The notes under the pieces are model-generated. The model was given only the letters and a program-made list of their open reading frames with translations, was not told where the DNA came from and searched no databases. The translations under genes were made by a program, and so were the position numbers. From Ylistrum balloti (taxonomy: Eukaryota): DNA of 64,000 bases. Positions 1-61,700 of this stretch are shown here, in pieces (the stretch's first letter is position 1; each line of letters starts with the position of its first letter). The DNA lies in the NCBI RefSeq assembly GCF_031769215.1, contig NW_026782038.1, positions 310,001 to 374,000 on the forward strand. The letters run 5' to 3'.

Positions 1-1060
1 GATGATATTCACAATAAGGTCCTAAAATATCTATCAGAGTCATCATTAGAAAAACTTATTATTTCTAATTCTATTTTTTGATCGGGAAATGTCCCAAAAT
101 CATGGTAAAAGGCAACTGTGATTCCTATCCACAAACAGGTTAAAGATACGATAGATTCCTCCAGTGACCGCCCAATATCACTCAAGAGTTGCGATTGTAA
201 ACTCTGGAGCGAATGATAAATTCAAGATTAATTTTGATATCTGAATCCAATCATAATATCACCCCTACAAAGCGTTTTTATATCTAAGCGAGGTACCAAC
301 GATCATATGTTTACACTTGAAACCTTTGTGCATGAGGCTTTTCTAAAGAAGGAGTACTTGGTTGCTGTTTTCTTCGATTTGGAAAAGGCTTACGACACAA
401 CGTAAACATACGGCATAATGAAAGATCTGCACGGTATAGGTGTTAGAGGTAATCTACCAAATATTGTTTCAAATTTCCTATCAGATAGAGTATTTGAATT
501 CTGTAATGGAACGACCCTTTCCGGTGTTCATCATTAGGAAATGGTTGTACCACAAGGTAGCATTCTCTCGGTTACATTTTCTAGACTTAAAATTAACAGT
601 ATTGTCAAAATATTATCCCTTCAATGCAGGGCGCTCTATATGTCGATGACTTCATTATATGTTATCGATCAAGGAATATGAATACCATCGAAAGACAACT
701 ACAACACTGTTTGAATCGACTCCAAATTTGGAAAGATGAAAATGGATTGAAATTTTCACAATCAAAAACAGTTAGTAAGCATTTTTGTCAAATGCGGAAA
801 CAACACGACAATCCAAGTCTCCGGTTGTTGAGCAAACCAACTTCCTCGGACAACTCCGACAGTAAATTGTCGTTCCTTCCGCATAGAAAATACCTTAAAG
901 CTAAATGCTTTAAGGTACTGAATATTCTAAAGGTGGCGCCCCACAGTGGTTGGGGAGCTGATAGAAAAGTGTTGCTAAGACTTTATGGAGCTCTTATAAG
1001 ATCAAAATTGGACTACGGTTCCATATATAACTGGAAAATCTTCCAGCTCTTGTCTATTTC
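1..1060 (+). mobile_element. Degenerate non-LTR retrotransposon (LINE) reverse transcriptase fragment, frameshifted
   Basis: RT motifs spread over several frames: IPIHKQVKD..RPISL, VAVFFDLEKAYDT, VPQGSILSVT, LYVDDFIICYRS, LIRSKLDYGS. Stops and frameshifts lie between them. The pattern resembles I-group LINEs. Confidence 0.9.
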
Positions 1061-2139
1061 ATCAACTTTTTCTGGTGCATTTGGATATTTTTTCTTTTTG
1101 CAACGATACCAGTTAATGTCTTTACAGAGAGATACCTTAAACGAAGTATTATAATAATGAATCATTGTGTGCTGATGAAATGATGTTACTGGTGGGTGGG
1201 GGTTGCCAAGGAGAGAGACGCCATCTTAGATCCGTTGCTATATTTCATCTTGACCGAGAAATACATGACTACATCCGATTAAGCAGGAGACACTTTGACG
1301 CATCACTCATGTAGAATGCAGACAAACCTCGGGCTATTACAAGGTGTTTACGATTTTGCAAATCAAATGGAATGACCGATTTATGTCAATTGGAACTGGC
1401 ATCTAGCGACATTTAATCTATTTTCAGTAAATATTGTAAAACGTTAATCCTATATTCAGCCAGATCTAGTTCTGAAGCTATGAAATTGGATCATGACCTT
1501 TTTCGTCATGGTTTCTACATTTCAATTTTTAACTTCTTTTAATACTTCGTAAATAACCATAATGTAGTTTAAACGTCTCAGATTGCTTAAACCACGGTCT
1601 AAACTAAACGTGAGCATTTTGAATCGGCGTTCAACCGACTGACTGAACCATTCCATATACAATATCAGACCATTTAAACTTCTTTTCGAAATGGACGTTT
1701 CCAGTCAATCAAGTTAAAGCGATATTGCTTTATCAGCATAGACCAATCAATCGACATCAGCAATTTTGATTGCTGTTGAGCATGCGTGAAATCATGAAAT
1801 CACTCATGTTGAAAGGGAAAATAATGAAAACAGGACGAGTTAAAAAGCAAACGACATTCTCGAAATTTTGTAAATTACTCTTTAACATTGTTGAATGGAT
1901 CAGGGACAATGATAATACATACGAATACTAAAAACTATGAATTTGTTTCACAAAACTTTTATTCAACATAATTTGGTCCATGTGGATCTAAATCTACAAT
2001 TGTAAGGAAGGGAAGCAACCCTGACAAATAATCCGGCGAAACCACTATCTTTATTTACGAACACAAGATATATAAACTATCGTTGTCTAATATAATAAAC
2101 CAAATATCGCTGAATTGGAAGAGTTCACCCAATGAATAA

Positions 2140-7613: not shown

Positions 7614-8487
7614 TCAGCAGCTCTCAAAGGAACACTCCGGGGCGCCATATACATTAAAACAGGAACATTTGTTACCACATTTGTCCACAATAACTGTCTT
7701 TCCAAACGGTATGAAAGTGTTCTGATGACGACAACCTTTTTAAAATAGAAAAAAAGATACTTACATGTAAATAGTACATAGAATCATATTAATCATAAAG
7801 TAAGATTTAATGACTGATGTGAATTTTTCTTTCTTTCTTTCTTTTTCGGAAATATTAACGTCTTCGTTAAATCTTCGAGAAGTGAAATGTTTTAATATCA
7901 ACTGTGTTAGAATTATTTGAAATTGTCATAAGGACTTGTTGGTGAGTGACTTACCTTGTCGACACTGGCATTTAAGGTTGGGGATCCAGTCTGGACACTG
8001 CCAATTGTCAGCGAAAACACACTCTTCACCAGAGGCACAGCCACGGCTGTAAACAGGAGTAACATATTGTCAATTTGATACAGAATTATAAAATGCCAAA
8101 CAGATTCAAGCACGGCTGTATCCAAAATTCAATATCAACCGCTAAGATTAATTACCTTGTACGGCATCGGGACACTGAAGCAGGAACGCGCTGTACCGCA
8201 TTAGGCTGTGTCTGCCAGAACTCTCCTGTCATTGGTCGTACAGTTTGCTGCTGGGACGAAATGGCGGGAATCTGTGGAATTGTAGGAAACTGTGACGTGT
8301 ACGTATTTGGGAAGAGCTGCTGTCCTGGCAACAAGACGCTGGATGTACTTGGGTAAATTATGTTTGGAAGCTTTGAAATGATCATCGGCCCACTTCCTGG
8401 TCTAAATTGATGATACCGGTGAGCACTTATTGGGGCTACCGCCAGAACCAAAGTGACGAGAAACAATAATTCAGTTGATGTACACAT
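7614..8487 (-). CDS. Gene A: secreted 181-aa protein; signal peptide, P/Q/S/I-rich spacer, C-terminal 12-Cys domain
   Basis: join(8487-8156, 8046-7955, 7735-7614), phases 2 and 1, GT-AG. Signal peptide MCTSTELLFLVTLVLAVAPISA. Domain CRTSRGCASGEECVFADNWQCPDWIPNLKCQCRQGCRHQNTFIPFGKTVIVDKCGNKCSCFNVYGAPECSFESC* aligns Cys-for-Cys with B, C and D. Confidence 0.9.
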
Positions 8488-13655: not shown

Positions 13656-15473
13656 TTAAACCAAAGGAGATTCTGTCGAAAGTTCTCTAGTTGTAGTAAC
13701 GTCTGTATTTGAAATTCCGGTAACGTTGTTTAGTTCATCCCCAGGTTTTTGAGAGACAGTTTCTGGTAATGAAGAATCGTTTACAATTTTTTCCACCACA
13801 TTCATAGGTTCGATAAATTGTTGCAATTCCGGGACTGTGACACGATTTGAGGAACTAGCTGAAATTTCAAATCCGCTGTCGATCTTTGCTGTAGGAAGGC
13901 TATCGAATGCGCCTTGGAACCCTCCGAGATCAGCATCTGATGAAACTGTTCCCGTAATGGAAATTGTTGGATCTTCTGGTTTACACATGCGTTGTGTACA
14001 TTCAGCCTAAAAATGAAACAGAAAATGACATGAATAGCTTAAGTATAATCAATGATAATTTCATAAAGTGAAGGTATGCTACGAAAATGCAACGTATACC
14101 AGTTAACCTTAAGTACCATTTTTAGTTGTCATGTTCATCATCTAATAAATATACACGGAGAACCTTTGTGAAGTAGGTCATTCATATTATGAAATTCGAT
14201 ATACTTCACGACTTTAAAAATTACAATTTGATTTGTTATCATTTTGATATGCAAATGATGGAGTTTATAACTTACCGCGCCATACATGTTATTACAGGAG
14301 CACGTGTTTCCGCAAACGTCGATCGTGATAGATCCACCCAGAGGGATAAAGGTATAGTCGAGGCGACATCCCAGGCGACACTCGCACGCAACGGAGGGAA
14401 TGTAGCTAGGACAAATGTATTCCTCCGCAAATACACACTCAGCTCCAGTATCACAACCACTGAAGACAAGAGAAATAGAACATGTCAACTGGCATATCTT
14501 TAAACATGCTGTAATGTAAGCAGTTTCATTCAATACTTAATGAGTACATAATAATAGTCTCACTAAAAGCATTTACTGGCAAATAGTAGGAGTGATTGTT
14601 GGTTTGTTTTTTAACATAAAATACTTACGTCTGATGGCAGCTCGAGTTCTGTTTTTCTCCTTCGACTCCGGGGAAAATTTTGTTAGTGTCAGGTAATCCT
14701 ATTTCAGGAAATGTCATGTCGGGAAGTCCCGTGTCAGGGAGGTTGGAATCGGATGCATCAGTAATGATCACTGGAGTTATAATTGGGAGCTCCTCTCCAT
14801 TACCGGGATCTGTAACGACTATGGAACTGATTCCTGTGTCAGATGATGGAGAGTCTGGTGTTGTTGCTTGATCTCCGTTTTTGTTTTGTTCTTGAACGAC
14901 TGGTTTCCCATCAGCATCCACATCTTTGGTCTTAAAGCCTATACCGGTCTCGACTCCCGAAATCAGTATTTTGTCTCCAGTATCAAACATGGAGTTGATG
15001 CCAAGATTTGGGAATGTTGGTACGGAACTAGCAAAATCTGGTGTCCCAACAACATTCACATCACTAGGGATAACTCCAGCTTCTCGGGGAACAACGAATC
15101 CCGTATTTACGATACCGCTGTTTTCATGGTTGATGGTACCGCCAGTAGTGGGGAAAACATACCTCTTATTCAACCCAAGGTCACTTGAAGGGACTATAAA
15201 GTTTGGTGTTACCGTCGCTTGCGGATGAAATGTATTTATGTTAGCAGGAAAGCTTGGTCTGTAGAAAGGTCCATGGCCTTTTGTTGGGTAGATAGTCCCC
15301 ATACCTTTTCGGACCATATAGGTGGGATACCTGTGAATATAAATTCGATGAGGAATGACAACACGACGGTGGATGAGCGGTGATACAATTTTCCTTCGAT
15401 GATATATGATATGTCCACAACAGTCGGAAAGGATTCCAAGTACTGCTACAGCGAACAACAGAATGGTATTCAT
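13656..15473 (-). CDS. Gene B: secreted 459-aa protein; signal peptide, His/Arg-rich head, acidic P/T/D region, 12-Cys domain, acidic S/T tail
   Basis: join(15473-14629, 14459-14276, 14006-13656), phases 2 and 0, GT-AG. Signal peptide MNTILLFAVAVLGILSDCCG. Domain CHQTGCDTGAECVFAEEYICPSYIPSVACECRLGCRLDYTFIPLGGSITIDVCGNTCSCNNMYGAAECTQRMC, then a 108-aa tail ending STESPLV*. Confidence 0.92.
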
Positions 15474-22943: not shown

Positions 22944-25561
22944 ATGCTATTCCGTGTTGGACGTTCGCTGTTTGTCGGATTCATATTAAGTGTATCTATT
23001 GCATTGGTGCATGCACAAGGAACTACAACAGGACAACAAAATGGCGTCTCGTTTCCGTCCCAACCAATGTTCTTAGGTCAAGAAACTGGCGCTAATTCCG
23101 GACAAACAGGTTCCAATGGAATGCAAACTCCTAATCTCTTTACTGCTTTCAGTGGTCAATCTCCGGTCACCGTACCAGAAACGACCAATCAGTCTCAATT
23201 TGGACTTGCAACAGTGCCTGTAACAAGCGCCGGAACAACCAATGGTCAGATGACCAACTCTATAGTTCCAAGCACAACGACGGGTACAACTGTCAATACT
23301 GGATTCACTGGTCAGGCTCAAGGAGTAAACGGCTTTCCACCTGCTCCTCCAGCCATAAACTCCGTTTTTCCGACACAAACTGGTGTTCAACCATTTCCAG
23401 GACAGCAAAACAGACCCACCGGGTTCCCAGGACAACCTGCCGTTCAGTCAATGTTTCCTGGTCAGACAGGCCAGGCAACATCAGGACAAATTCCACTATT
23501 TCTAGGACAGCAACCAGGTATGCAGACAGGTTTTCCCGGACAACCAGGCGTACAACCCGGATTTCCAGGGCAACCTCGTCCATCCGTTTTTCCCACAACC
23601 GTTTTTCCCGGACAAGCACAGCCATTTACACCTCAGAACACAGCTGCTTTTCCAGGACAAATAGGAGTTCCGGTCCAAGCCGGAAGTACTGACCAACAAG
23701 GAGCGACCCAGCAGACCGGAAATGCAATTAGTGGAACGAGTCAAATTGCGACAACCAATGGTGGTCAACAACAATCTGGAATTATTACTGGTCAAGGCCA
23801 AACGTTCATCAATGGACAGACAGGACAACAGCCGGGACAATTACCAGGACAGCAAATCCCTGGTGGTCAGTTTGGACCTCAACCTGGACAATTTGGACCA
23901 CAAACCGGACAATTTGGACCCCAGACCGGCCAATTCGGACCTCAAGCTGGACAATTTGGACCAAATGGACAGTTCAGACCCCAGACCGGACAGTTTGGTC
24001 CTAATAATCAGTTTGGTCCAAATCCATTTAACCCCTTCGGACAAAGGCCGGGCCAGTGCCATACAACGTAAGTATTTAAAAATAATTAAATTATATTAAC
24101 ACGCAATGTGCGGCACAGGACTGATGTAATTAAACAACATCAGACGTAAAACACTGTATTATTTAAAATCACGAAGCATTTATAGTCTTGATTAAAAGGC
24201 TAAACAAAGGCTATGTTGTGTTTCAAGTTGTATTCTATAGGGACGTAGTAAAGTTTAATTACCCTCCCGCTGTTTCATGGTTATTAGGAACATTCTGATA
24301 GAGTGGCCAACCTTTAACTTGGTCATAAGTATTCATAAATTCAAGACCTGCAGAAATTAAAACAAAATGTACACAGAATAAACTGATAAAGCTAACTGAA
24401 AAGTAAAACAAAGATTTAAGAGACTGAAACATTCATTTAAAAGTGATTCAGCTAAAGAATATTATATTGAAATACATTATTTATGAATTTTAGAAATAGA
24501 TTTGGGAATTGCTTTATATATGTCGGAAACTTGTGCCCAGATTCATGGTATAGACATACAGAGGTCCAAAAACGATGCGAGTGTTTTTTCTTAAAGTTTG
24601 TCCATTCAAAACATGTTAAAAGAACGACGATATATGTTGTAGCTTCATTAAACAAGATTAATGGTAATCATTGGTCATTGTATTTCTAAATACAACACGA
24701 GTTGTTCATTGTTCTCAGAATAATAAAACAAGGTAAATGATTGATTCGTTTGTTTATTATAAGAATGTTCATGAATGTTTGTATTGCCTTAACGAGTTAT
24801 AAAAACAAAATATGACAAATTACTTTGAAATTTCAATATTATCCTATATTTGTCGTTTCAGAGGTTGCCCAGGTGGATCTCAGTGTGTTTTCGCACCAAC
24901 TGGTGCCCACATGTGTCCAACTTGGATCCCAATTCTGCCCTGCACTTGCCGCCAGGGATGCCAGGCACAGAACCTGTTTATCCCTCTAGGCCAGTCCCGT
25001 CAAATCGACAGGTGTGGAAACACGTGTACCTGTAATAGTCCCGATGGAACGGTAAGTTAAACTTATATAAAGCCGTAATATATCTGATTTTTTCATAAAT
25101 TGTTTTCTGTTAATGTGAGTGTATTACGATGGTTTATTTCCATACCAAAATTTCAAATCTGCTAATATTTTAACTTGCACGTGTATCTTTGTGTACGTTA
25201 TCATAAAATGGTTTTGACGCCCAACAATGAACAATTAATCATTACTAGCCGTCTCTATCTTTTATCTGGTACTAATATACACACGAGTGATCATTAAACA
25301 CCATTTACCTAAGTCTTAGCCATATTTCATGTTTCCTGACGGATCATAACGTCTCAGCACTTACAGGTGTACAGCGGTATGACCCCTGGCACTACAAACG
25401 TTTCGTAACTCCTTCCGGGCATGCGCGATACTAATTTCTTTAATGTCTTCCTCTTGTAGCCTGCGTGTACGATGATGGCATGCCCTTCTCCACAACAACA
25501 ACAGCAACAGCAAGGACAACAAGGACAGCAACAACAGCAACCGCAACAACAGGGAAAATAG
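22944..25561 (+). CDS. Gene C: secreted 471-aa protein; signal peptide, G/Q/T/P/F-rich repeats, 12-Cys domain, poly-Gln tail
   Basis: join(22944-24067, 24862-25051, 25460-25561), phases 2 and 0, GT-AG. The true start is the ACCATG at 22944, not 22833. Signal peptide MLFRVGRSLFVGFILSVSIALVHA. Domain CHTTGCPGGSQCVFAPTGAHMCPTWIPILPCTCRQGCQAQNLFIPLGQSRQIDRCGNTCTCNSPDGTPACTMMAC, tail PSPQQQQQQQGQQGQQQQQPQQQGK*. AATAAA at 25643. Confidence 0.93.
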
Positions 25562-36943: not shown

Positions 36944-39900
36944 ATGATGAAATCAATGGTTTCGTTAGGATTGTGCTGTATCCTATTCTCAATCATCACC
37001 ACTACATACGGTCAACCTCCGTTCCCGACTTTTCCTCGGTTTGGTCCTCCACCCAGGATTATAAGAGGATTTCCTGGTCCTCCGGGGTTCGGTAGAATCG
37101 GATTTAGACCGCCTTTGGGCAGGCCAGCATTCATTGGAGGGGATATTTTTGGCCCACCGCTGGTAGGTAGGCCAGGGATCGGAGGTGGCCCAATTTTCAC
37201 CCAACCAGGCAATGCCATATTTAATGGAAATCCATTTGTCCCGCCGTTTTCACCTGTAAATGTTGTGAATAATGGTTTGCCAGGAAATGTGGGATTTCCG
37301 ACAAACACGGTTGTTCAAGGAAATTCAGTAGCAAACACAGGAATAGCGCCAAATTTTGGAATCGGTACCGCAAACACTGGAAATATAGGTACGGCTGGCA
37401 ACACAATTGGGAACAACGTATTCGGAACACCAAACACTGGACCCAACACAGTAATCACACAGGGGCCACCAGCAACGGGCACTGGTGTTCCGGTTAATGT
37501 AAACACCGGCTTCCCTACTAATTTAAACACTGCCTTCCCTGCACCTGTTAACACTGGCTTTCCTGCAACCCTAAATACAGGTTTTCCAGCACCCTTACCG
37601 AACACAGGTTTTCCTGCACCTGGTTTGAATAGCGGATTTTTTGCTTCGGTAAATACCGCTATTCCAGGAACTTTACCAAGCACAGGTGCCGCGGTTCCAG
37701 GGTCCACAAATGTTTTCGGCGGAACTAACACTCTAACCGGAGCCGGGGTTCCGAGTGGAACTGGAACATTGACAAATCAATTTTTGTTGAATAACGGAGT
37801 TCCTGCTTTGGCTCAAGTAAACAGTTTAGGAACACAGGTGACCAGCAATGTACAAACAGATGGAACTCAGGATAATATGGTCCTGGCTGCCGGAAACTCA
37901 TTCGCCAATCGATTTACCGTCACAGGTGAAGGTGCTTCGCAGACTGGAACCTTCGGTGGTGAAACTGGTGGCGGTACCTTCCAGGACCCAACATCCGGCC
38001 AGACCATTTCAGGAAACACATTATTGAATACCGGTTTGGATAATGCTGTTCCGGCTGTTGATACTTCAGGAGCAGGCGCAGGGACAGGTGCAACAAGCTC
38101 TGGGATCCAGGGAACCGAACTTCCTTCAGAAGTGGCCGTAATTGGAACAATCGGCACGACGGATGCGGGAACTGTTGATCCAAACGCTCTCCCAACAACA
38201 GCTGTAGGATCAAAATGCCAAGCAACGTAAGTTATCTTATCAGTATTTAGTCATTAAGTATATATGGGGTCAAAGGTACCTAATTTTATACACATTCACA
38301 CTGCAACAGTTTGAATCGCTGAGCCAGTTGAAACATAATCTGTAATTTTTATCTCAGCTGTTGATGGACAGTTAGTAAACACAGAGAAGACAAATCTCCC
38401 TTCCTCGTGACATGATTTTTGTCGGAGTTCGTAGAGTGTCATGGCTTAATATTCTAGAAATGTTAAATAGTGAGTCCTAAATGGCAGGAGAAGCTTGTGG
38501 AACTTCATCACGTCCTGAAAGTTATTACTTTTTATAAGCAAGCCTGCTTTTTGAAATGAAAAGTTAAATAAGTTTACTTTATATTGTACACGACAAACGA
38601 AAGTAATTTGGGACTGCCAGGATACCAGTCATCATAAAAAAACTGATATGTCGTTCTCTGTTTTAAATCAGACTTAAGCAAAACCTATTAAAATTTGTTG
38701 ACCCATGAGAATTTCAGAAACTGTTTTTCTTGTATTTACAGTGGATGTTCAGCCGACCAGCAATGTGTGTTTGCTGGGGAGTACCCCTGCGCCATGTACC
38801 TAGAATCACTTGAGTGTCGCTGTCAGGCAGGTACGTAATTGATTTTTTATAAGTAATCATCGGTGAAATAGTCATCTTTACAGAACACAAGACTTGGTAA
38901 CTCGAATATCTTTAAAAATTATGATAAATACCACTTTGGAACTGGAATCCAGATGGTTTGTTTAATATATATATAATACGCCATGTTTTTTAAGTATATT
39001 TGATATAATGTTATGTAACATGTTATACACTTGTTTCATTTCCAAGATCTATAAGATACTGAGATATAGCTAATAGAGCTAACCCAGAAGGAGGTGTGTT
39101 AACCTCCTTTTTATCTATGGTTTTTTATCATTTGTTTATTGTATAAACTTTTTATACAACAAACAGCTTATAGTGTATTTCAGCCAGAGGTTTCTTTCAC
39201 TTGCCGTTTCATTTAAATGATTTTTTTCCTGAAACACATTGTTTCCGTTGTTAACTGCATCCTCTTGGCGACAGAAGTCGTAATCTGACATTATATCTTA
39301 TAGCAGAAAGACCCGGTCAATTTCCGATCGTTGAATTATAACATCTTTTTGTCTTATCTAGGGGATGTAAAATGGAAATATTAATATTACTGTCTCTTTA
39401 ATTCTTATCGATATAATGTTAATACTATTTAGCCAATAGTGCAAATAGATTTAGTAGTTCCAGCACATTTAAAAACCAAGTAAATTGTACAGTCTCGTCA
39501 TGTATAGTTGCTCCTCTACCTCATAACATTGAGGTAAGCCATACCCCCCCCCTCACACACACACACACACACCCTCTACTTTTAAAGACACTTCAACATG
39601 GTGCTGTGTCTTCATTTGATATATTGATTGAGCTGACGTATGACTTCACTATGTCGCAGGTTGCCGTGTGATGAACTTCTTTATTCCCGAGGGTCAGTCC
39701 CGGCAGGTCGACAGCTGTGGTAACGTTTGTTCGTGTGACCAGACAGGAGAGAACAAGGGAACGGTTAGTATAGTAAAAACAAGAGAGTTCCATGTTTGTG
39801 TTCGTTCGGAGTTAATATGTCAGGATCGCGTCATTGGCATGGATATTGCGTTAGTTATATCAGTAAGATGATAAAGGTGACGCGCCATTGTGCTGGGACA

Positions 39901-41267
39901 AAGGATGGATGCCGATTGGATCTGATCATGCATGTTGAGTAGGGAAGGTGTCGTTGGAGTGGAGTTGTATCAGTGAGATTGTGTCGTTGAAGTTTGGATG
40001 GTGTCGATAAGGTTGGGTCGTGTCGATGGATTTAGGTTGTGTCGTTGGAGTGAATCGTGTCTTTATAGTGAGACTGTGTCTATTGGGCGGGTTTTGCCTC
40101 GATGGAGTCAGGTTGTATCGGTGGTGTGGGGTTGTGACGTTGTTGTAGGGTTGTGTCGGTGATGTGGGGTTGTGACGTTGTTGTAGGGTTGTGTCGGTGG
40201 TTTGGGGTTGTGATGTTGTTGTAGGGTTGTGTCGGTGGTGTGGGGTTGTGATGTTGTTGTAGGGTTGTGTCGGTGGTGTGGGGTTGTGATGTTGTTGTAG
40301 GGTTGTGTCGGTGGTGTGGGGTTGTGACGTTGTTGTAGGGTTGTGTCGGTGGTGTGGTGTCGTGACGTTGTTGTAGGGTTGTGTCGGTGTAGTGAGGTTG
40401 TGACGTTGTGTAGGGTTTGTGTCGGTGGTGTGGGGTTGTGACGTTGTTGTAGGGTTGTGTCGGTGGTGTGGTGTCGTGACGTTGTTGTAGGGTTGTGTCG
40501 GTGGTGTGGGGTTGTGACGTTGATGTAGGGTTGTGTCGGTGGTGTGGAGATGTGTTTTTGTTTGATCAAGATCAATGGCGGTGTTATCATATGATAGGGC
40601 CACCGAGGGACACATGATAGTGACATCACCTTTGCATGTCATAACCTACATCTCATTCAATGCTGAGCGCTTAGCAGTGCTATTTGAAAGAATTTGGTAG
40701 GTCACGGTTTGGGGACAGAAAACAGTCATTTTCACTCGAAAGGACGCCAACCAACAGGATCGAAAGTGAGATAGGAGAGAATTTTGAAGAAAAGAAATGA
40801 AGAAAACGATCCCAAATTTATTTGGCTCTGATGATCAAGCAATATGGACAGGGGCCATTTTCCGTTTTTAGGCTTTGTTTGGGCGGAAAAACAATTATGA
40901 TGGTGCTCTGATGACTTTGGAATTTCCTTGAGAGTAAAGTTTGTAAATATCATGGGTAGTGTGCCCTTGACGAAGTGGACGAGTGTGTAGTTTGCTTCAT
41001 TAATTTATGCGATCTACCTATGTACATCAATAATCCATATGTGAATGAAAATATTGCACGTTTGTAACACATGTATGTTTGTTGTATAATACTTACCACT
41101 TATTACCCCTGACCTCTGATTGTCACCATCACCACTGGTCAAGATGGACACGGTCAGTATGCATTTCTGATGACCAGTCACATTCACACATTATGTCTAT
41201 ATTAAACATACATTATTTTATCGTCCGGCAGGCGCGGTGTACGACGATCAACTGTCCACAGCAGTAG
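36944..41267 (+). CDS. Gene D: secreted 503-aa protein; signal peptide, R/P/G/F head, long uncharged N/T/G/P region, acidic linker, C-terminal 12-Cys domain
   Basis: join(36944-38226, 38742-38830, 39660-39763, 41232-41267), phases 2, 1 and 0, GT-AG. Signal peptide MMKSMVSLGLCCILFSIITTTYG. Domain CQATGCSADQQCVFAGEYPCAMYLESLECRCQAGCRVMNFFIPEGQSRQVDSCGNVCSCDQTGENKGTARCTTINC, then PQQ*. Confidence 0.93.
40100..40550. repeat. 38-bp G/T-rich minisatellite (about 12 copies) in intron 3 of gene D
   Basis: Unit GTAGGGTTGTGTCGGTGGTGTGGGGTTGTGACGTTGTT, period 38 (40145, 40183). Decayed flank from about 39960. Confidence 0.95.
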
Positions 41268-45472: not shown

Positions 45473-46300
45473 TTAAATGCTAGTTTGTTTTCCAATCGGC
45501 GATGAAACACAGGTAACACCTCTGTCTTTCGGTTGATCTATTTCGTTAACAATGATGCACGTCTCTAGTGTCGAAACTGTATTTTTTGGCACAATTCCAC
45601 GTCTAGGAACACAAGCGGGAATGTTGTCTTTTTTAATAAAACCTTCATTCTGTTTTAGATTATTTGTATTTCCTTGTTTTGGAAAGTTTGACAAAGCTTC
45701 CCATTTTGCAGAGAATGACAATCCTGAAGACCCCACTGAAGAATTACTGGAATCTAGGAAAATCTCCATTTCAGATTCCTCCGAAGCCTGTCGTCCTATT
45801 TTTGACCTATAATCACTACTTTTCGCTCGGTTACACGAACTTCCGGAAGTGTCTGTTGCACTTGAACCGGAAGAAGATACTTCCCGTGACAGCAATAATT
45901 TTGAAGAACTGTTTGTATGGCAAGAACTCTTTCTATCGTTGAAACTGTGTGAATTGAAACTGTCTCCCATGTCTAATATACGCTTTTTTAGCTTTTCCTG
46001 TCGCTCGACAACAAGACCAGTCGCGAGAAACAGCAATAGCACACCTAATCCTAACGTTACCGGCCCACAGATTATAAAAACGGATCTGTGCGTCCATAGA
46101 ACAGATCCTTCTCCTAACCCCTTGACGACACTCCCAAATGTCATGATGGAGCCACTTACTAATGCCAGAGAAGATAAAACATATATTCTTTTGTATTTCA
46201 CAAGTCTTCGGTCAGTTTTGACGGCGACCTTTCGCCTTTCTCGACTGTCACGCCTCCTCTTGAATTCTTTTTCTTGTGCAACTTCTTCATGATGTTGCAT
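45473..46300 (-). CDS. Gene F: single-exon 275-aa membrane protein with two TM helices and a Ser-rich tail (TMEM200/PIRT-like topology)
   Basis: Basic N-terminus, hydrophobic segments IYVLSSLALVSGSIMTFGSVV and VFIICGPVTLGLGVLLLFLATGLVV, then a polar S-rich C-terminus. A candidate 5'UTR splice acceptor (TTCCTCGTCAG) lies at about 46405. Confidence 0.75.
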   Translation of the reverse strand: MQHHEEVAQEKEFKRRRDSRERRKVAVKTDRRLVKYKRIYVLSSLALVSGSIMTFGSVVKGLGEGSVLWTHRSVFIICGPVTLGLGVLLLFLATGLVVERQEKLKKRILDMGDSFNSHSFNDRKSSCHTNSSSKLLLSREVSSSGSSATDTSGSSCNRAKSSDYRSKIGRQASEESEMEIFLDSSNSSVGSSGLSFSAKWEALSNFPKQGNTNNLKQNEGFIKKDNIPACVPRRGIVPKNTVSTLETCIIVNEIDQPKDRGVTCVSSPIGKQTSI

Positions 46301-47599: not shown

Positions 47600-48200
47600 G
47601 GAAGATTACACCACGTGTAGTCAGGATGATTACACCACGTGTAGTCAGGATGATTACACCACGTGTAGACACCAGGAAGATTACACCACGTGTAGTCAGG
47701 ATGATAAAACACCACGTGTAGTCAGGATGATTACACCACGTGCAGTCACCTGGATGATTATACCACGTGTAGACACCGGGATGATTACACCACGTGTAGT
47801 CAGGATGATTACACCACGTGCAGTCACCTGGATGATTATACCACGTGTAGACACCGGGATGATTACACCACGTGTAGACACCAAGATGATTACACCACGT
47901 GTAGTCAGGATGATTACATCACGTGCAGTCACATGGATGATTATACCACGTGTAGTCAGGATGATTACACCACGTGTAGTCAGGATGATTACACCACGTG
48001 TAGACACCGGGATGATTACACCACGTGCAGTCACCTGGATGATTACACCACGTGTAGTTAGGATGATTGCACCATGTAGACACCGGGATGATTACATCAC
48101 GTGTAAACACCTGGTAGATTACACCACGTGTAGACACCGGGATGATTACACCACGTGTAGACACCGGGATGATTACACCACGTGTAGACACCAGGAGTAC
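47600..48200. repeat. 24/27-bp variant minisatellite containing 22 perfect CACGTG E-boxes
   Basis: Core GGATGATTACACCACGTG followed by TAGTCA, TAGACACCG or CAGTCACCT. CACGTG counted 22 times between 47612 and 48184. Confidence 0.95.
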
Positions 48201-51200
48201 TTGATTCTAATTCGATAAATAAAACTGTTGAATAACAACTCCCAAAAATCCTGGAACTCATATTTAATGATGTGCTGGCACCCATTTCAATCTTTGTGAG
48301 ACTGAAAAGCACATTGAACATGAAAATTATTCAAAGCAGCGACCTACATTTTCAACATTTTGATTTCATTTATTTATTTATTTATTTAACAACGCTGTAG
48401 AATTCTTGATTCAAAGATCGATGTTGAACTAAAAACCCTTTAAGAAACATATACAAAGTTACTCTCTGGAGCATTCACTTCTTAATCAAGGAAAACAAGT
48501 GTCCATGCGCAAAACGTGTACATCGACAAAACACATTGTGTTGACGCCTCGAAGCAACATTATCGTGTATTTCATGAGTCATTACGGCATTAGTCACATG
48601 GTATAATCGAAAGAGTAACAACTACTTAATTTTTTTATCAATCTACTTAAATGCCATCAACAAGTCTATAAGCTTATAATCATCTACATATACGTCATCA
48701 AGCTTGTATTTCAAATACCGGAATTGGAGTGTACACGGAAATATAGCGGGTTTTATTGTATAAAGCGTGAATAATTATAATTATATTTTTTAAAATCTTG
48801 AACTGTCTTATGTTATCTATGTTATGCTTTTTGGCTTTCAATAACCTGTTTAATAACACGAAATTTCGACTTTATTTTATGATAATTATAAAAGTGAAAA
48901 AAATAACAAAAGAATTTATTGGCTTAATTAGCACTAATTAACTTTGTGCCAAGATGCGATTCCGCGACTTCTGTGACGTCATACAATGTTTGGAGTCAGT
49001 AATCTAGCTCTGAAATACGTTCGTTAATAAATGATAAATATTCCCTTTAAAGATTACTTTATAAGTATAACATTTAGAACTGGTATTCTGAGAAACTTCA
49101 TGATTAAGATAAAAATAACCACGATGACTTACTCTAATGATATAGTTCCGTGATCTCAGCGACATCTACCGAGTCTTTCGTGTATTTATTTTTTGTATAT
49201 TTTTGTAACGATTTTTATTCAACGTTCAAATACCAATGCTCAAAATAAACTCTCATAAATTCTAAATTGGAGAACTAATCATTTGTGTAAATGACTGAGG
49301 ATTTGATCACGAAGGCTCATTTCAGACACGAATAAATTTGTGTAGTTGGTATGTTTTTCACCGGTTTAACCTGTATGTTTTTTCACCGGTCTCACCTGTC
49401 TGATAAGGTTTCACTGTAGATTTAAATTATAACTAATTGAAAGTTGTGTTTATTGCAAACAGGCTACTATACAACACGACCAAATACTTCAATATCGAGA
49501 AAAACATGATACCAAATTAGAATTTTCAGTAACATGACCGTTCCGATTTATGTTGAAACTTCTTTAGATTTTAAAAGATCTAAGCATCTTTAATAAATAT
49601 CCATTTAATCATCACAGGTGGTTGTCCATTCTGCCCATATAAAAAAAACAGTATAAGTTCAATGATACTCTAAGACCGGATTTATTGATTCACTAAAAGA
49701 CTATGAACCGGATCTGAACATAAAGTAAAACATTTTACTATTTATGTTTTATGTTTCAAAAAATTGTTAGAAATGTTAATGTCAATTTCGATACATTGTT
49801 TCGATAAAACGTCCGTATGCTTTATAAAGGTAAGATGACGAATACCACGTTCTCAAAGAGAGGTCCGGTGTAGCGACAACCATACAACAGGGAACATTCA
49901 CGAACAATACATTGATATTTAGATCATATCGACCAAATGTGTCGAGTTTTCTTCAATATCCATATCAATAAGTTATATCACATGTTTACACCGTAGGAAG
50001 GGAAAACAGGGGTTTCAATTTCAGGAAAAAGAACATTCAAGTGAAGGACAACAATTTAGAAGTCGTTTTTTGTTCATATAAACATTAATCGCTATGAGCA
50101 GCTGATGAGAAAAAGAGAACTTGTATGTAGTGTCCTTTTATATATCATGAAAATATCTATATGTGAACTTGAAGGATGTAAACAACTAATTGTTATGTTC
50201 CTGACAGGCTCTTCGTCTTCATCAACATCTCTCTAAAAATATATATAGCTCTATCAAAACAGGTACAATCTACCAGAAACATATTGGTAGATACTGATTA
50301 TCGACCAGGAATTCAGTCCAATAACGTATTATTGCTCCAAAATTGTTCACAGCAGTGAAAGGCACATTATCAGAAAACAAAGCCATGAGTCGAATCATCT
50401 TATTGTAATGAGGCTCAGCACTGCTGAAAGTACAAATGTCATATAGACTGGTGCGAGAAACAGATGTTAGTAAATATCTCTAAAATTCCTTGTGTGTTCA
50501 TTGTAATAGTCATTCCTCCTCTATATAGTAAGTTCTATCAGTGTAAACACGCTTAATGAACCAGTAAAGTGACTCGGCTGATCAATTAACGAAAAGAACA
50601 ATGTTTCAAATCTGTAACGGAATCTTAACAAGGTCATAGATCTTAAAATGTTTTAAATTGCCCTATCACATCTATTCGTCTATTTATTCATCTACTTGAT
50701 ACATCATGGTTTGTACGCCTTTCAGAACACGATAAAACACAATCGTAAACCAAAAACTCCTTAATTATGGAAAGAAATGAATTATAAAAGTGAGCTTTTT
50801 GTGACGGAATTTAACTTGGTAAAGCATGTCTAATTCGTTCCACACATAACACACTTCCTAAGCAGTAACAATCAAAGTATCGGTATATAACAGAGCGTAG
50901 AGTTTTAAATCACAACTCTTAATAAAGCAGTGAAAGGTCCACGTTCACACTGAACAAAATCCGAACTAGAATTTAAAGGGCTGATACGACTTATCAGAAT
51001 CTGTAGATCTCGATTTCGGCAATGGCTCATAATACAAAGAAGGCGAAAACAAATAACTGCTGTGTTCATATTATTGTCAGAGTTTTGTTTTGTATCCTTC
51101 ATTTCACTTTTAATTAACTTACCTCTGTTGTTTCTTCATAATCAGTGTGAGGACTAAACTGAATGTTGATCAACACCTCATTACTTTATCACAGTTCAGT

Positions 51201-58712: not shown

Positions 58713-61700
58713 CTTCACATCTGGATTAGTTTTGATCTTGTGAGATGCTAACATCAAATTTTCAAAGCCAGTTATCCAGTCATTCAGTAACTTCTCCCGA
58801 TATTTCTTTTCATTTTCCTTGTTTTCTAGCTTGTCAGAAAGTCTAGAGTAAAAGAAAAACTGAAGATTTAACATCAAATTCATATCTCTCATTGCAATAA
58901 GGTAAAGCAGTATATGTAATTATATCTTAATTTTACCCAAAGCTTCAGAATTCAACTTGCACAATTTTTTCTCACAATATAATAAAAGGGGCATAACTCC
59001 TAAGAAAACCATGAAGGAGAAGAAAAAATTATTCACATCGAAAAATTGAATTCTTAATTGTTAAGATTATTGTCTCATCTTTGATATGTACACAGACCGA
59101 CTGACAGACAGATGGGTAGAACAGACAAACTGAATTGTACAAGCACATCTCAATATCTTAAATAGGGGAACAAACCTGATGTTTTTCTGTTGTAGATGGG
59201 ACAACTCATTCCTGCTCTCTTTGATGTTTCTTCTTGCCTGCAACAGAGATTTATTCAATCATCAGAACATACTGGCAAGCAAAATAGGAATGAATTACGA
59301 AGAAATGAATCTTCTGTTAAACATTAATTTGACAATTGAAATGGAACTAAACATACCCGTATAATGTCTGAACGCTTCTGTCTAATGTCTTGAACAGCTT
59401 CTATCTGAAATGAAAAATAAATGAATAAATAACTGAACTTGTTCAATACAAAGAACTTGACATTCTGTTACTAGGGTAATGTTGTTTCAATATTTTGCAA
59501 TAAGGTTAATCAAATATTAAACAAAAATTCCATAAATATGTACATTCTGCCATTCTTTTTTTTGAATCTTTAAATCAAGTAGTCTATCGGGTAACACAAG
59601 AAAATTTTCGCAAAAGACATCATTAAAGCGATGTACATTTGTACAAATTTTGGGGTCAAAATTATTGAAAAGGAAAAATTATTGAAGTTTATATTGAGCA
59701 TAAAATTTTTGCTCTTTTTAAAAATTTATTTTTAAATTAAGCAATCCCAAGTCTCCTTGTCTTGATTTGAGTGGTGCTGAGTACACCCTTGAGTTAATGT
59801 AATGTACATACTGATACATTCTGACATGACAAATGTTAACATGGTCACTAAAGCAGTAGTTCTTCATAACAATCTACATTGTATACAGATGCTTATTACA
59901 AAGTCACTTCAATGATATCCAGCTGGTAGCTTTAAAAGGAATAGAAATGTATGATCAAGATGTCACCATAAGTACTTTAGGCATCCTCCTGGACCTGAAT
60001 GACCAAGATGTCACCATAAGTACTTTGGGCATCCTCCTGGACCTGAATGACCAAGATGTCACCGTAAGTACTTTAGGCATCCTCCTGGACCTGAATGACC
60101 AAGATGTCTCCATAAGTACTTTGGGCATCCTCCTGGACCTGAATGACCAAGATGTCACCATAAGTACTTTGGGCATCCTCCTGGACCTGAATGACCAAGA
60201 TGTCACCATAAGTACTTTGGGCATCCTCCTGGACCTGAATGACCAAGATGTCACCGTAAGTACTTTAGGTACTTTAGGCATCCTCCTGGACCTGAATGAC
60301 CAAGATGTCACCATAAGTACTTTGGGCATCCTCCTGGACCTGAATGACCAAGATGTCACCATAAGTACTTTGGGCATCCTCCTGGACCTGAATGACCAAG
60401 ATGTCACCGTAAGTACTTTAGGCATCCTCCTGGACCTGAATGACCAAGATGTCTCCATAAGTACTTTGGGCATCCTCCTGGACCTGAATGACCAAGATGT
60501 CACCATAAGTACTTTGGGCATCCTCCTGGACCTGAATGACCAAGATGTCACCATAAGTACTTTAGGCATCCTCCTGGACCTGAATGACCAAGATGGTGTG
60601 GGCATCCTCCTGGACCTGAATGACCAAGATGTTACCATAAGTACTTTAGGCATCCTCCTGGACCTGAATGACCAAGATGTCACCATAAGTACTTTAGGCA
60701 TCCTCCTGGACCTGAATGACCAAGATGGTGTGGGCATCCTCCTGGACCTGAATGACCAAGATGTTACCATAAGTACTTTAGGCATCCTCCTGGACCTGAA
60801 TGACCAAGATGTCACCATAAGTACTTTGGGCATCCTCCTGGACCTGAATGACCAAGATGTCACCATAAGTACTTTAGGCATTCTCCTGGACCTGAATGAC
60901 CAAGATGTCACCATAAGTACTTTGGGCATCCTCCTGGACCTTCATGTATTCCCGAGTCTCCCATTAAAGGCAATATTTACAATTTATCAATAAGATGTCC
61001 ACCTCATTTTACATGTATCTCTCCTTTCTTTCCTCTAATATGACCTTGTCTTGTTCAGATGAAGTAACAAGATAAAAAGTGATACTTACTGTATTAGTGA
61101 TTGATTTCCGAACATAACTCAGCAGCTGATATTCCTTCCTCTTAATGGCTGGTAAATCTTTTCCACTTCTAGATGAGAAAGTAAAATCTGTGAAACACTC
61201 ATATCTACTCCACGGTAGGCATGTAATGCTCTCAGGGCATGTATTTATATTATAATCCAGGACTGTTATGATGATGGGTTAAAAACACTTGCATTGAATT
61301 AATTCAGTTTTCAGATTAATCAGATCAGCATTAGGTTTCAATGATTTAACTAGCTCCTTCTACACATATATCTTACATTAAACTTCCAAACAGCCAATAC
61401 CTCTCTAACAGGGCCCTGTCTCTCAGGAAGGCCACTATGTATTGACACAAATCATGTGTAGTGTGTATTGTAATAATAACATGATGTTAACTATGAATTT
61501 TTAATCACAATGTTGAAATGTTTTATCATATAATTCAAAGTGTACTGAAATAAAGTAACTGTTATGTCAATGTAACATTTAAATAAAAAGTTGATACTAG
61601 AAGGTTTCTATTAATACTTGTGAGATTTACTATCCATATTTCAGTACAAACATTTTCTGCATACAGTATCAAAGTTTATATAAACTAATACCTGGCTGCT

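What the first reader, a model, noticed from the sequence alone, without database searches (positions are those of the whole stretch)
24862..25561. The 12-Cys domain looks bipartite: an unassigned 6-Cys module plus a VWC/TILa/pacifastin-like module with a hypervariable last loop
Seen: the phase-1 intron in A and D falls exactly in the Gly before Cys7, cutting the domain into two 6-Cys halves. The second half is GC-x5-FIP-x-G-x6-D-x-CGN-x-C-x-C-x8-C-[TS]-x3-C. Established: TILa/VWC N-subdomains follow GC..G..Y..G......C..C.C...G...C....C, and pacifastin inhibitors follow C-x9/12-CN-x-C-x-C-x2/3-G-x3/6-CT-x3-C with P1 right after CT. Seen: this loop differs in every paralog (CSFESC, CTQRMC, CTMMAC, CTTINC) while neighbouring positions are conserved. 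Inference: either a diversified protease-inhibitor loop (putative P1 = F, Q, M, T) protecting a secreted matrix, or a VWC-type binding surface.
Basis: partly seen in the sequence, partly recalled or inferred. Interest (0 to 1): 0.7.

Follow-up and report, generated by a model that had tools for sequence, protein, structure and literature searches.

The report
Bivalve 12-cysteine matrix-protein end domain
Four neighbouring scallop genes for secreted low-complexity proteins end in a conserved, bivalve-only 12-cysteine domain; its second half looks like the small VWC / TILa / fibronectin-I / pacifastin-type module, but its last loop is not unusually variable and nothing shows that it inhibits proteases.

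Summary
The sequence observation holds. The window comes from the scallop Ylistrum balloti. It carries four tandem paralogs (A-D), each encoding a signal peptide, a low-complexity region and a C-terminal ~74-residue 12-Cys domain. A phase-1 intron splits the Gly before Cys7 in A and D.

The domain is a real family of about 25 true relatives among 1.84 billion representative proteins. All named members are bivalve, and none reaches a Pfam threshold.

The second half (Cys7-Cys12) gets consistent but sub-threshold hits:
- TILa in 11 of 31 members
- Pacifastin_I in 5
- VWC2L_C in 5

In a confident AlphaFold model (pLDDT 89-97) this half superposes on fibronectin-I modules, the VWF E3 module and VWC domains (Z 2-3.8, rmsd 2.2-2.9 A over ~40 residues). 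The first half stays unassigned and never occurs alone.

"Hypervariable last loop" is not supported. Among close orthologs the loop changes no faster than the rest (2/24 vs 25/355). Between old paralogs it is only the third most variable stretch.

My best reading is a disulfide-locked docking or assembly handle on matrix proteins. Protease inhibition is unproven, at about 0.12. No expression data or dN/dS could be obtained. The scan had not found this on other DNA.

The parts
24057..24067 (+). Gene C, end of exon 1: Cys1 and the following residues, ending in a phase-2 donor
   Evidence...GQ-C-H-T-T, with the last Thr codon split (ac|a) and donor gtaagt at 24068.
24862..25051 (+). Gene C exon 2: Cys2-Cys10 of the 12-Cys domain (first half Cys2-6, second half Cys7-10). 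There is no intron at the Gly before Cys7.
   Evidence: Pfam TILa E = 0.025 on residues 32-58. No SNP in four DNA runs.
25460..25561 (+). Gene C exon 3: Pro-Ala-Cys11-T-M-M-A-Cys12 (25460-25483), then a poly-Gln/Gly tail and the stop codon
   Evidence: Acceptor ag at 25458-25459, phase 0. A 6-nt indel in the poly-Gln tract at 25499 appears in all four runs.
22944..24056 (+). Gene C exon 1: signal peptide plus a Gln/Gly/Pro/Phe-rich low-complexity region
   Evidence: No Pfam family.
7614..7735 (-). Gene A exon 3: the whole second half (Cys7-Cys12) and the stop codon. It begins with the last two bases of the split Gly codon.
   Evidence: TILa E = 0.0031, VWC2L_C 0.016, VWC 0.028. Matches P0001.
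7955..8046 (-). Gene A exon 2: Cys2-Cys6 (first half), ending in a phase-1 donor inside the Gly codon
8156..8487 (-). Gene A exon 1: signal peptide, Pro/Gln-rich linker and Cys1
   Evidence: 100% identical to P0001, LOC132546915 of Ylistrum balloti.
14276..14459 (-). Gene B exon 2: Cys2-Cys10, with no intron at the Gly
   Evidence: Matches P0002.
13656..14006 (-). Gene B exon 3: Cys11-T-Q-R-M-Cys12 followed by a 108-residue acidic tail
   Evidence: Pacifastin_I 15.2 bits on P0002 residues 333-355.
14629..15473 (-). Gene B exon 1: signal peptide, basic then acidic low-complexity region, Cys1
36944..38226 (+). Gene D exon 1: signal peptide, Gly/Pro/Asn/Thr/Phe-rich region, Cys1
   Evidence: Matches P0066.
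38742..38830 (+). Gene D exon 2: Cys2-Cys6, ending in a phase-1 donor in the Gly codon
39660..39763 (+). Gene D exon 3: Cys7-Cys10
41232..41267 (+). Gene D exon 4: Ala-Arg-Cys11-T-T-I-N-Cys12-PQQ and the stop codon

Best explanation
The stretch encodes most of a conserved, bivalve-restricted C-terminal domain of about 74 residues and 12 cysteines. The domain closes four tandem paralogous genes for secreted proteins whose remainder is fast-evolving low-complexity sequence.

The C-terminal six-Cys half is a module of the FnI-like / VWC-subdomain-1 / TILa (VWF 'E') / ancestral pacifastin-like class. It has a beta-hairpin (F-I-P-x-G) followed by a three-stranded sheet. The likely disulfides are Cys7-Cys10, Cys8-Cys12 and Cys9-Cys11, inferred by analogy. 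The module was probably acquired as a phase-1 exon.

The N-terminal six-Cys half is a family-specific cap. Cys1-Cys3 are inferred to pair because oysters lost both together. This half is now welded to the module in one rigid unit.

Inferred function: a disulfide-locked docking or assembly handle. It would anchor or cross-link the low-complexity chains in an extracellular matrix (shell matrix, periostracum, ligament or similar), perhaps by the beta-strand addition typical of FnI-type modules. The loop between the last two Cys is an ordinary variable surface loop that is fixed within each ortholog line.
For: Gene models. Three of the four agree exactly with NCBI models.

Family:
- 30 hits at E <= 1e-3 in 1.84e9 representatives, 16 of them at <= 1e-10.
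- Named members come from scallops, mussels, oysters, a pearl oyster, Sinanodonta and Mactra.
- The genome has only these four copies.

Second half, sequence level:
- TILa in 11/31 members, Pacifastin_I in 5/31, VWC2L_C in 5/31, VWC in 1/31, all on Cys7-Cys12.
- UniProt labels two Mytilus coruscus members 'VWFC domain-containing'.
- The nearest language-model cluster is VWC/VWC2L-like, score 0.77.

Second half, structure level:
- The AF2 model built with the alignment has pLDDT 89-97 over residues 111-180, with five strands in the second half.
- VIA gives FnI Z 3.8 (rmsd 2.5 A over 42 residues) and VWF E3 Z 3.3 (2.2 A over 39). FCGBP, MUC5B, VWF E', collagen-2A VWC and CCN3 VWC also match.

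Origin: genuine modules of this type in the same genome are class 1-1 exons. That matches the phase-1 intron before Cys7.

Cys1-Cys3: both are absent in four Crassostrea sequences.

Loop. No SNP falls in the domain exons of C, against 14 in its introns.
Against: - Every Pfam hit is below its curated cut-off.
- Foldseek finds nothing at E < 0.26, and VIA Z scores are all below 5 (expected for 40 residues, but weak).
- hhalign against the scallop's own pacifastin/VWC-type modules gives only 14% probability.
- The Cys8-Cys9 spacing is 3 (C-G-N-x-C), not the 2 seen in VWC, TILa and pacifastin.
- Disulfide pairs could not be read from the model because no coordinates are available.
- There is no expression, proteomic or biochemical evidence, so the matrix-handle function is pure inference from architecture.
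- At deep divergence the last loop does differ more than the average position (24/28 vs 247/412).
Confidence: 0.6

Rival explanations
1. The second half is a working canonical serine-protease inhibitor of the pacifastin type (a matrix-embedded 'ancestral' pacifastin-like domain). P1 would be the second residue after Cys11 (F, Q, M and T in A-D), protecting or regulating the secreted matrix.
For: - The C-[TS]-x3-C spacing, the invariant Gly in the Cys10-Cys11 loop and the C-x-N-x-C-x-C core resemble pacifastin.
- Pacifastin_I hits 5/31 members, best E 9e-4.
- Foldseek TM is 0.54-0.61 to pacifastin chains 7sgq_E, 7snd_B and 4djz_I.
- PMC13388995 proposes matrix-embedded mollusc pacifastin-like domains with an N-terminal beta-hairpin.
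- The loop differs between old paralogs but is fixed within each line, as specificity determinants would be.
Against: - Scores are 11-19 bits against a cut-off of 27.9. Genuine modules in the same genome score 22-40 bits.
- A, C and D give no pacifastin hit.
- Asn is not adjacent to the Cys2-equivalent, and it is Ser in three lineages.
- The putative P2 is D or E in three lineages and S in two.
- Pacifastin chains did not reach Z 2 in VIA.
- There are no tandem inhibitor units and no excess change at the loop among close orthologs.
- Inhibition by 'ancestral' pacifastin-like domains is itself not biochemically shown in that paper, as far as I read it.
Confidence: 0.12
2. The 12-Cys domain is one indivisible, bivalve-specific invention. 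The likeness of its second half to VWC/TILa/pacifastin is convergence, of the kind common among small disulfide-rich beta modules.
For: - All sequence and fold matches are sub-threshold.
- The two halves never occur apart.
- One strand, 137-145, spans the boundary.
- Three intradomain introns exist, and only one lies at the half boundary.
- The C-x3-C-x-C spacing is unlike the known families.
Against: - Many divergent members hit the same three related Pfam families in register.
- Several independent structural neighbours of one fold class align over about 40 residues at 2.2-2.9 A.
- The phase-1 boundary matches that of class 1-1 modules of this type.
Confidence: 0.15
3. The domain is a ligand-binding VWC-like unit (BMP/TGF-beta-type growth factor trap) or a cytokine-like single-VWC protein, so these would be signalling or immune proteins rather than matrix proteins.
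For: VWC, VWC2L and NELL2 appear among the weak matches. Single-VWC proteins are known in invertebrate immunity; this rests on my own knowledge and on the citation in PMC5854119.
Against: - VWC subdomain 2 (the CC-x2-C motif) is absent.
- Long lineage-specific low-complexity regions with divergent composition are typical of structural secreted proteins, not of cytokines.
- No dibasic processing site lies before the domain.
Confidence: 0.08

Closest known systems
TILa / 'E' module of von Willebrand factor and gel-forming mucins (Pfam PF12714)
   Same: Both are six-Cys modules of about 40 residues. They begin with Cys plus a beta-hairpin carrying an aromatic residue and a Gly, continue with a C-x-x-C-x-C-like core, and end with two closing Cys. 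TILa is the most frequent Pfam hit (11/31 members). The VWF E3 module aligns at Z 3.3, 2.2 A over 39 residues.
   Different: Scores are 14-18 bits against a cut-off of 27. The core spacing is C-x3-C-x-C. The domain is not preceded by VWD-C8-TIL; a family-specific 6-Cys cap takes that place. It sits at the C-terminus of low-complexity proteins.
VWC domain, N-terminal subdomain SD1 (Pfam PF00093, VWC2L_C PF23331)
   Same: The profile aligns Cys7-Cys12 to VWC positions 1-36/39 of 57. Collagen-2A, CCN3, VWF C4 and NELL2 VWC domains are structural neighbours. UniProt labels two mussel members VWFC.
   Different: There is no SD2 and no CC-x2-C motif. Only six Cys are present, so by inference the two Cys that bridge to SD2 in VWC must pair with each other. 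Scores are below the cut-off.
Fibronectin type I module
   Same: This gives the best structural superpositions of the second half: Z 3.2-3.8, 2.4-2.9 A over 39-42 residues. Both have a two-stranded plus three-stranded sheet layout.
   Different: FnI has four Cys. No fn1 Pfam hit was found, and sequence identity is 12-20%.
Pacifastin inhibitors (PF05375), including the 'ancestral' matrix-embedded class of PMC13388995
   Same: Shared features are the six-Cys scaffold, an Asn near the second Cys, an invariant Gly before the fifth Cys, a four-residue loop between the last two Cys often starting with Thr, and an N-terminal hairpin as in the proposed ancestral class. Foldseek TM is 0.54-0.61.
   Different: Scores are below the cut-off. 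The Asn is displaced by one residue. Thr is not conserved. There is a single copy fused to another 6-Cys half, with no dibasic-linked tandem units. Inhibitory activity is unknown.
Tandem pacifastin/VWC-SD1-type modules of the same genome (G000:C165:1210639-1219882)
   Same: They share the architecture C-x9/10-G-x5/6-D-x-C-N-x-C-x-C-x7/8-C-T-x3-C, with a phase-1 intron a few residues before the first Cys.
   Different: These modules score 22-40 bits on Pacifastin_I and 20-25 bits on VWC. hhalign to the 12-Cys family gives only 14% probability over 24 columns. They are repeated single-exon modules without the N-terminal 6-Cys cap.

Membership tests
TILa (PF12714) | Score at or above Pfam's gathering cut-off (27 bits) | tested here: not met
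   Best scores are 18.0 bits (A exon 3), 15.1 (C exon 2) and 13.7-16.8 in other members. 11/31 members match below threshold.
TILa (PF12714) | Occurs after a TIL domain in VWD-C8-TIL-TILa assemblies | tested here: not met
   No VWD, C8 or TIL hit in any of the 31 members at E <= 1.
TILa (PF12714) | Fold of the VWF/mucin E module | tested here: inconclusive
   6n29_B residues 1197-1239: Z 3.3, rmsd 2.2 A over 39 residues. 8rde: Z 2.8. 2mhp E' region: Z 2.5. All are below the Z level the tool calls distinctive.
VWC (PF00093) | Ten Cys, with C-terminal subdomain SD2 and the CC-x2-C motif | tested here: not met
   The domain ends at Cys12. A ends there, D three residues later, and there is no CC pair.
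VWC (PF00093) | Score at or above the cut-off (27.6 bits) | tested here: not met
   15.2 bits (A exon 3) and 16.5 bits (P0012). The alignments cover VWC positions 1-36/39 only.
Pacifastin (PF05375) | Score at or above the cut-off (27.9 bits) | tested here: not met
   B scores 15.2 bits and the family best is 19.4. A, C and D give no hit. None of the four loci appears in the genome-wide scan, while other loci score 30-40 bits.
Pacifastin (PF05375) | Six-Cys scaffold with a conserved Gly in the Cys4-Cys5 loop (PMC13388995) | tested here: met
   Cys7-Cys12 are invariant, and Gly172 (P0001 numbering) is invariant in 12 lineages.
Pacifastin (PF05375) | Invariant Asn immediately after Cys2 (C-N-x-C-x-C) (PMC13388995) | tested here: not met
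   The motif is C-[GNA]-[NS]-x-C-x-C. One residue is inserted, and Asn is replaced by Ser in 2 of the 12 lineages tabulated and also in Pinctada P0014.
Pacifastin (PF05375) | Cys5-Thr-P1-P1'-x-Cys6 reactive loop | tested here: inconclusive
   The four-residue spacing is always kept. The first residue is T in 7 of 12 lineages, S in 2, D in 2 and E in 1.
Pacifastin (PF05375) | Pacifastin fold (TM >= 0.5 to solved inhibitors) | tested here: inconclusive
   Foldseek TM normalised by target is 0.54 (7sgq_E), 0.61 (7snd_B) and 0.58 (4djz_I), but with E 1.1-3.2. These chains did not reach Z 2 in VIA.
Pacifastin (PF05375) | Tight-binding inhibition of serine proteases | not testable with these tools
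   Needs recombinant protein and enzyme assays.
Fibronectin type I | Four-Cys module (1-3, 2-4) with hairpin plus three-stranded sheet | tested here: inconclusive
   The fold matches best (Z 3.8, rmsd 2.5 A over 42 residues). However, there are six Cys and no fn1 Pfam hit.

The most novel reading that the evidence does not exclude
The C-terminal half is a functional, matrix-tethered pacifastin-type inhibitor. Each paralog's fixed loop (F-E, Q-R, M-M, T-I after Cys-Thr/Ser) would target a different protease. Bivalves would then build self-protecting biomaterials by fusing an inhibitor head, stabilised by a lineage-specific 6-Cys cap, to phase-separating low-complexity polymers. This would also be direct evidence for the 'ancestral matrix-embedded pacifastin' idea of PMC13388995.
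Probability: 0.12. Interest if true: 0.7.

Novelty: new variant of a known kind. Interest (0 to 1): 0.4.

Why it matters
Bivalve shells, ligaments and other secreted materials are built from fast-evolving low-complexity proteins, and how these are anchored and assembled is poorly understood. This work defines a small, uncharacterised, bivalve-wide family whose only conserved part is a 12-Cys end domain, kept across scallops, mussels, oysters, unionids and a mactrid clam.

Showing what that domain binds, or inhibits, would give a handle on how such polymers are organised. It would also test whether the VWC-SD1 / TILa / FnI / pacifastin modules form one superfamily. The practical result here is more modest: the domain is real and unnamed in Pfam, but its 'hypervariable inhibitor loop' is not borne out.

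Tried and rejected
- Word search with C exon 2 alone found nothing, because its length filter only lets through proteins of roughly 35-110 aa.
- Word search with the family alignment was swamped by low-complexity words and added only P0066 and P0067.
- My first Pfam call used out-of-frame coordinates for several pieces. I repeated it correctly.
- Single-sequence AF2 of P0001 was useless, pLDDT 50. The alignment-based run replaced it.
- PDB sequence searches found nothing relevant with C exon 2, A exon 3 or the family profile.
- Literature searches by accession and LOC numbers and by keywords found no paper on these proteins. The supplements of PMC13388995 do not list them.
No ortholog DNA could be fetched, so no dN/dS was computed.
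- The look-up of sequencing runs returned only DNA holders. Read laying therefore gave polymorphism but no splicing or expression evidence.
- The domain tree is unresolved apart from ortholog pairs, so I could not tell intron loss from gain in B/C.
- P0024, P0029 and P0031 from the big search are repeat-driven false positives.
- The EGF_3 hit on D exon 2 (E 0.063) and UniProt's 'EGF-like' label for one mussel protein look like pattern noise.
- The spliced protein of gene C was never joined or searched as a whole. It was searched exon by exon by reference. A, B and D were handled through the NCBI protein ids that the tools returned.
Full report
**What is there**

The window is G000:C181:310001-374000 of a 648-Mb genome. 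Exon 1 of gene A is 100% identical to NCBI's LOC132546915 of the scallop Ylistrum balloti.

A six-frame motif scan found four copies of the C-G-N-x-C-x-C / F-I-P-x-G signature, at about 7.7 kb (-), 14.3 kb (-), 25.0 kb (+) and 39.7 kb (+). Reading the DNA around them gave four gene models:
- A has three coding exons and encodes 181 aa.
- B has three exons and encodes 459 aa.
- C has three exons and encodes 471 aa.
- D has four exons and encodes 503 aa.

The NCBI proteins P0001 (A), P0002 (B) and P0066 (D), returned by the searches, have exactly these lengths and junction residues.

Each protein has a signal-peptide-like N-terminus, a low-complexity region of quite different composition, and a 12-Cys domain of about 74 residues. 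B and C carry tails after the domain. The finding's coordinates (24862-25561) are exons 2 and 3 of gene C.

**Checking the observation**

The phase-1 intron inside the Gly codon before Cys7 is present in A and D and absent in B and C.

Two small slips: the motif is G-x5-D rather than G-x6-D, and the Cys10-Cys11 spacer is 11 residues in D, not 8.

More important, the domain has two further introns:
- A phase-2 intron directly after Cys1, in all four genes.
- A phase-0 intron before Cys11, in B, C and D.

Exons therefore do not divide the domain 6+6. Read-through ORF fragments from other bivalves start at the same Gly-Cys7 boundary or end at the same point before Cys11 (P0021, P0023, P0025-P0028, P0030). 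These intron positions are therefore old.

**The family**

A profile of the four paralogs' exon pieces (A1) was read against 1.84 billion representative proteins. It gave 30 hits at E <= 1e-3, 16 of them at <= 1e-10. Three of the weaker hits are repeat artefacts.

The named members come from Argopecten, Mizuhopecten, Mytilus (five species), Saccostrea, Crassostrea/Magallana, Pinctada, Sinanodonta and Mactra. All are 'uncharacterized'.

All members share the architecture of signal peptide, low-complexity region and one 12-Cys domain near the C-terminus. Consecutive accession numbers on shared contigs suggest the genes are also neighbours in Mytilus and Argopecten.

In Ylistrum the whole domain, and each half searched alone, occur only in these four genes. 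No Pfam family reaches its cut-off on any member. I found no paper on these proteins.

**The second half**

A's exon 3 carries all of Cys7-Cys12 in one exon. It hits TILa (E 0.0031, profile positions 2-39 of 55), VWC2L_C (0.016) and VWC (0.028, positions 1-36 of 57). Across 31 members the counts are:

| Pfam family | Members hit | Best E |
|---|---|---|
| TILa | 11 | 0.0017 |
| Pacifastin_I | 5 | 9e-4 |
| VWC2L_C | 5 | 0.0021 |
| VWC | 1 | 0.01 |

The TILa and VWC alignments cover all six Cys. The pacifastin alignments cover only the core from Cys8 onward.

UniProt labels two Mytilus coruscus members 'VWFC domain-containing'. The nearest ESM-Atlas cluster by features is VWC/VWC2L-like (0.77, a lead only).

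With the 31-sequence alignment A4, AlphaFold2 gave pLDDT 89-97 over the ten-residue blocks spanning residues 111-180. Predicted strands are 118-122, 137-145, 148-151, 155-157, 164-166 and 175-177.

Foldseek found nothing at E < 0.26. Its list is nevertheless dominated by FnI pairs, VWF D'D3 and TIL'E', MUC2/5, NEL and pacifastin chains (TM by target 0.54-0.61).

VIA-align placed residues 139-181 on several structures:
- FnI modules: Z 3.8, 2.5 A over 42 residues.
- VWF E3 module: Z 3.3, 2.2 A over 39 residues.
- FCGBP, MUC5B and VWF E'.
- Collagen-2A and CCN3 VWC domains.

These Z values are low in absolute terms, as expected for 40 residues. They all point to one fold class.

By analogy with FnI (1-3, 2-4), VWC SD1 and pacifastin (1-4, 2-6, 3-5; established knowledge), I infer Cys7-Cys10, Cys9-Cys11 and Cys8-Cys12. 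No coordinates were available to check this.

**A control inside the same genome**

Scanning the scallop genome with the Pacifastin_I model found eight tandem six-Cys modules on contig C165 and one on C75, scoring up to 40 bits. The same pieces also hit VWC positions 1-36 and TILa. The C75 piece additionally hits RECK's FnI.

This shows two things. First, these Pfam models overlap on one module class. That agrees with PMC13388995, which describes 'ancestral', matrix-embedded pacifastin-like domains with an N-terminal beta-hairpin, with Mollusca as the second largest group. Second, genuine members score far above the 12-Cys family. None of the four loci appears in that genome-wide scan, and hhalign between the two alignments gives only 14% probability over 24 columns.

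The 12-Cys family also departs from the hallmark 'Asn right after Cys2'. It has C-G-N-x-C, one residue longer than in VWC, TILa or pacifastin.

At least five of the C165 modules begin, and at least four end, at phase-1 splice sites (class 1-1 exons), with the acceptor a few residues before the first Cys. The phase-1 intron before Cys7 in A and D therefore fits acquisition of such a module by exon shuffling.

**The first half, and 'bipartite'**

No Pfam family and no structural neighbour matches Cys1-Cys6 specifically. Whole-domain matches such as NELL2 VWC have rmsd near 7 A.

Four Crassostrea sequences lack Cys1 and Cys3 together, which argues that these two pair.

The two halves always occur together. 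One predicted strand, 137-145, runs through the Gly142 boundary. My reading is therefore 'bipartite in origin, one unit now'.

**The last loop**

Among 12 lineages, the three free loop positions have 2.45-2.86 bits of entropy. As a three-residue window they rank third, behind positions 123-125 and 134-136.

Among close orthologs the loop is conserved:
- CTTINC is identical in Ylistrum, Argopecten and Mizuhopecten.
- CTKLEC is identical in five Mytilus species.
- Overall there are 2/24 changes in the loop against 25/355 at other non-Cys positions (p = 0.69).

Only across old paralogs and deep orthologs is it more changed than average (24/28 vs 247/412). That comparison uses non-independent pairs and counts framework residues in the background.

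Four DNA runs of the species show no substitution in C's domain exons, against 14 in its two introns. They also show a two-codon indel in the poly-Gln tail. 'Hypervariable' is therefore not supported; 'variable surface loop fixed within each line' is.

**Function (inference)**

The domain is the only part of these proteins kept across bivalves, while the low-complexity parts diverge freely. That pattern is typical of matrix proteins with a conserved docking end.

I therefore favour a disulfide-locked assembly or anchoring handle. It may bind extended chains by beta-strand addition, as FnI modules do (my own knowledge). The alternatives are a pacifastin-type inhibitor, a growth-factor-binding or cytokine-like VWC unit, and a convergent novel domain.

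**Limits**

- No RNA run was available.
- Gene C's spliced protein was not joined or searched as a whole.

Noticed in passing
G000:C165:1210639-1219882 (outside the window; L006 1002-9521, minus strand): At least eight tandem six-Cys modules of the form C-x-Y-x-G-x2-Y-x2-G...D-G-C-N-x-C-x-C...C-T-x3-C. They score 22-40 bits on Pfam Pacifastin_I and also hit VWC positions 1-36 and TILa. Most are class 1-1 exons. This is a mollusc multi-module pacifastin/VWC-SD1-like gene, in line with PMC13388995.
   Followed up: partly
G000:C75:392692-392781 (L007 505-618, minus strand): A six-Cys module scores over the cut-off on both FnI_RECK (37.7 bits) and Pacifastin_I (35.4 bits). This shows that these Pfam models cross-match.
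   Followed up: partly
window 25499: A six-base (two-codon) deletion in the poly-Gln tail of gene C, relative to the window, appears in contigs of all four DNA runs laid on it. It is a length polymorphism of the tail.
   Followed up: no
P0005 (Mizuhopecten OWF50897.1), P0014 (Pinctada), P0020 (Mactra), P0016 (Saccostrea 'mucin-17-like'): The public gene models of these relatives lose Cys11-Cys12 or run on after Cys10. They have probably missed the short last exon behind the phase-0 intron.
   Followed up: no
P0019, P0062, P0063, P0023 (Crassostrea/Magallana): A 10-Cys variant of the domain. Cys1 and Cys3 are both replaced, and a longer loop lies between Cys3 and Cys4.
   Followed up: partly
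P0006 (Saccostrea) and P0014 (Pinctada), N-terminal regions: Relatives of gene B share a His-rich motif (F-E-H-S-H ... H-S-H-D) in the otherwise unalignable low-complexity part. It might be a metal-binding site.
   Followed up: no
window 36944-38226 (gene D exon 1): The Gly/Pro/Asn/Thr/Phe-rich region nearly reaches the cut-off of Pfam DUF3432 (26.3 vs 26.7 bits). This is most likely a low-complexity artefact.
   Followed up: no
window 39926-40642, 47696-48218, 59947-60993: Long ORFs on both strands made of short tandem repeats (minisatellites). The first lies inside intron 3 of gene D.
   Followed up: no
window 624-1154 (+): An ORF whose translation looks, by eye, like part of a reverse transcriptase. 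This would be a retrotransposon remnant.
   Followed up: no
window 45473-46300 (-): A single 275-aa ORF with a basic N-terminus, a hydrophobic stretch and a Ser-rich tail. It appears to be an unrelated neighbouring gene.
   Followed up: no
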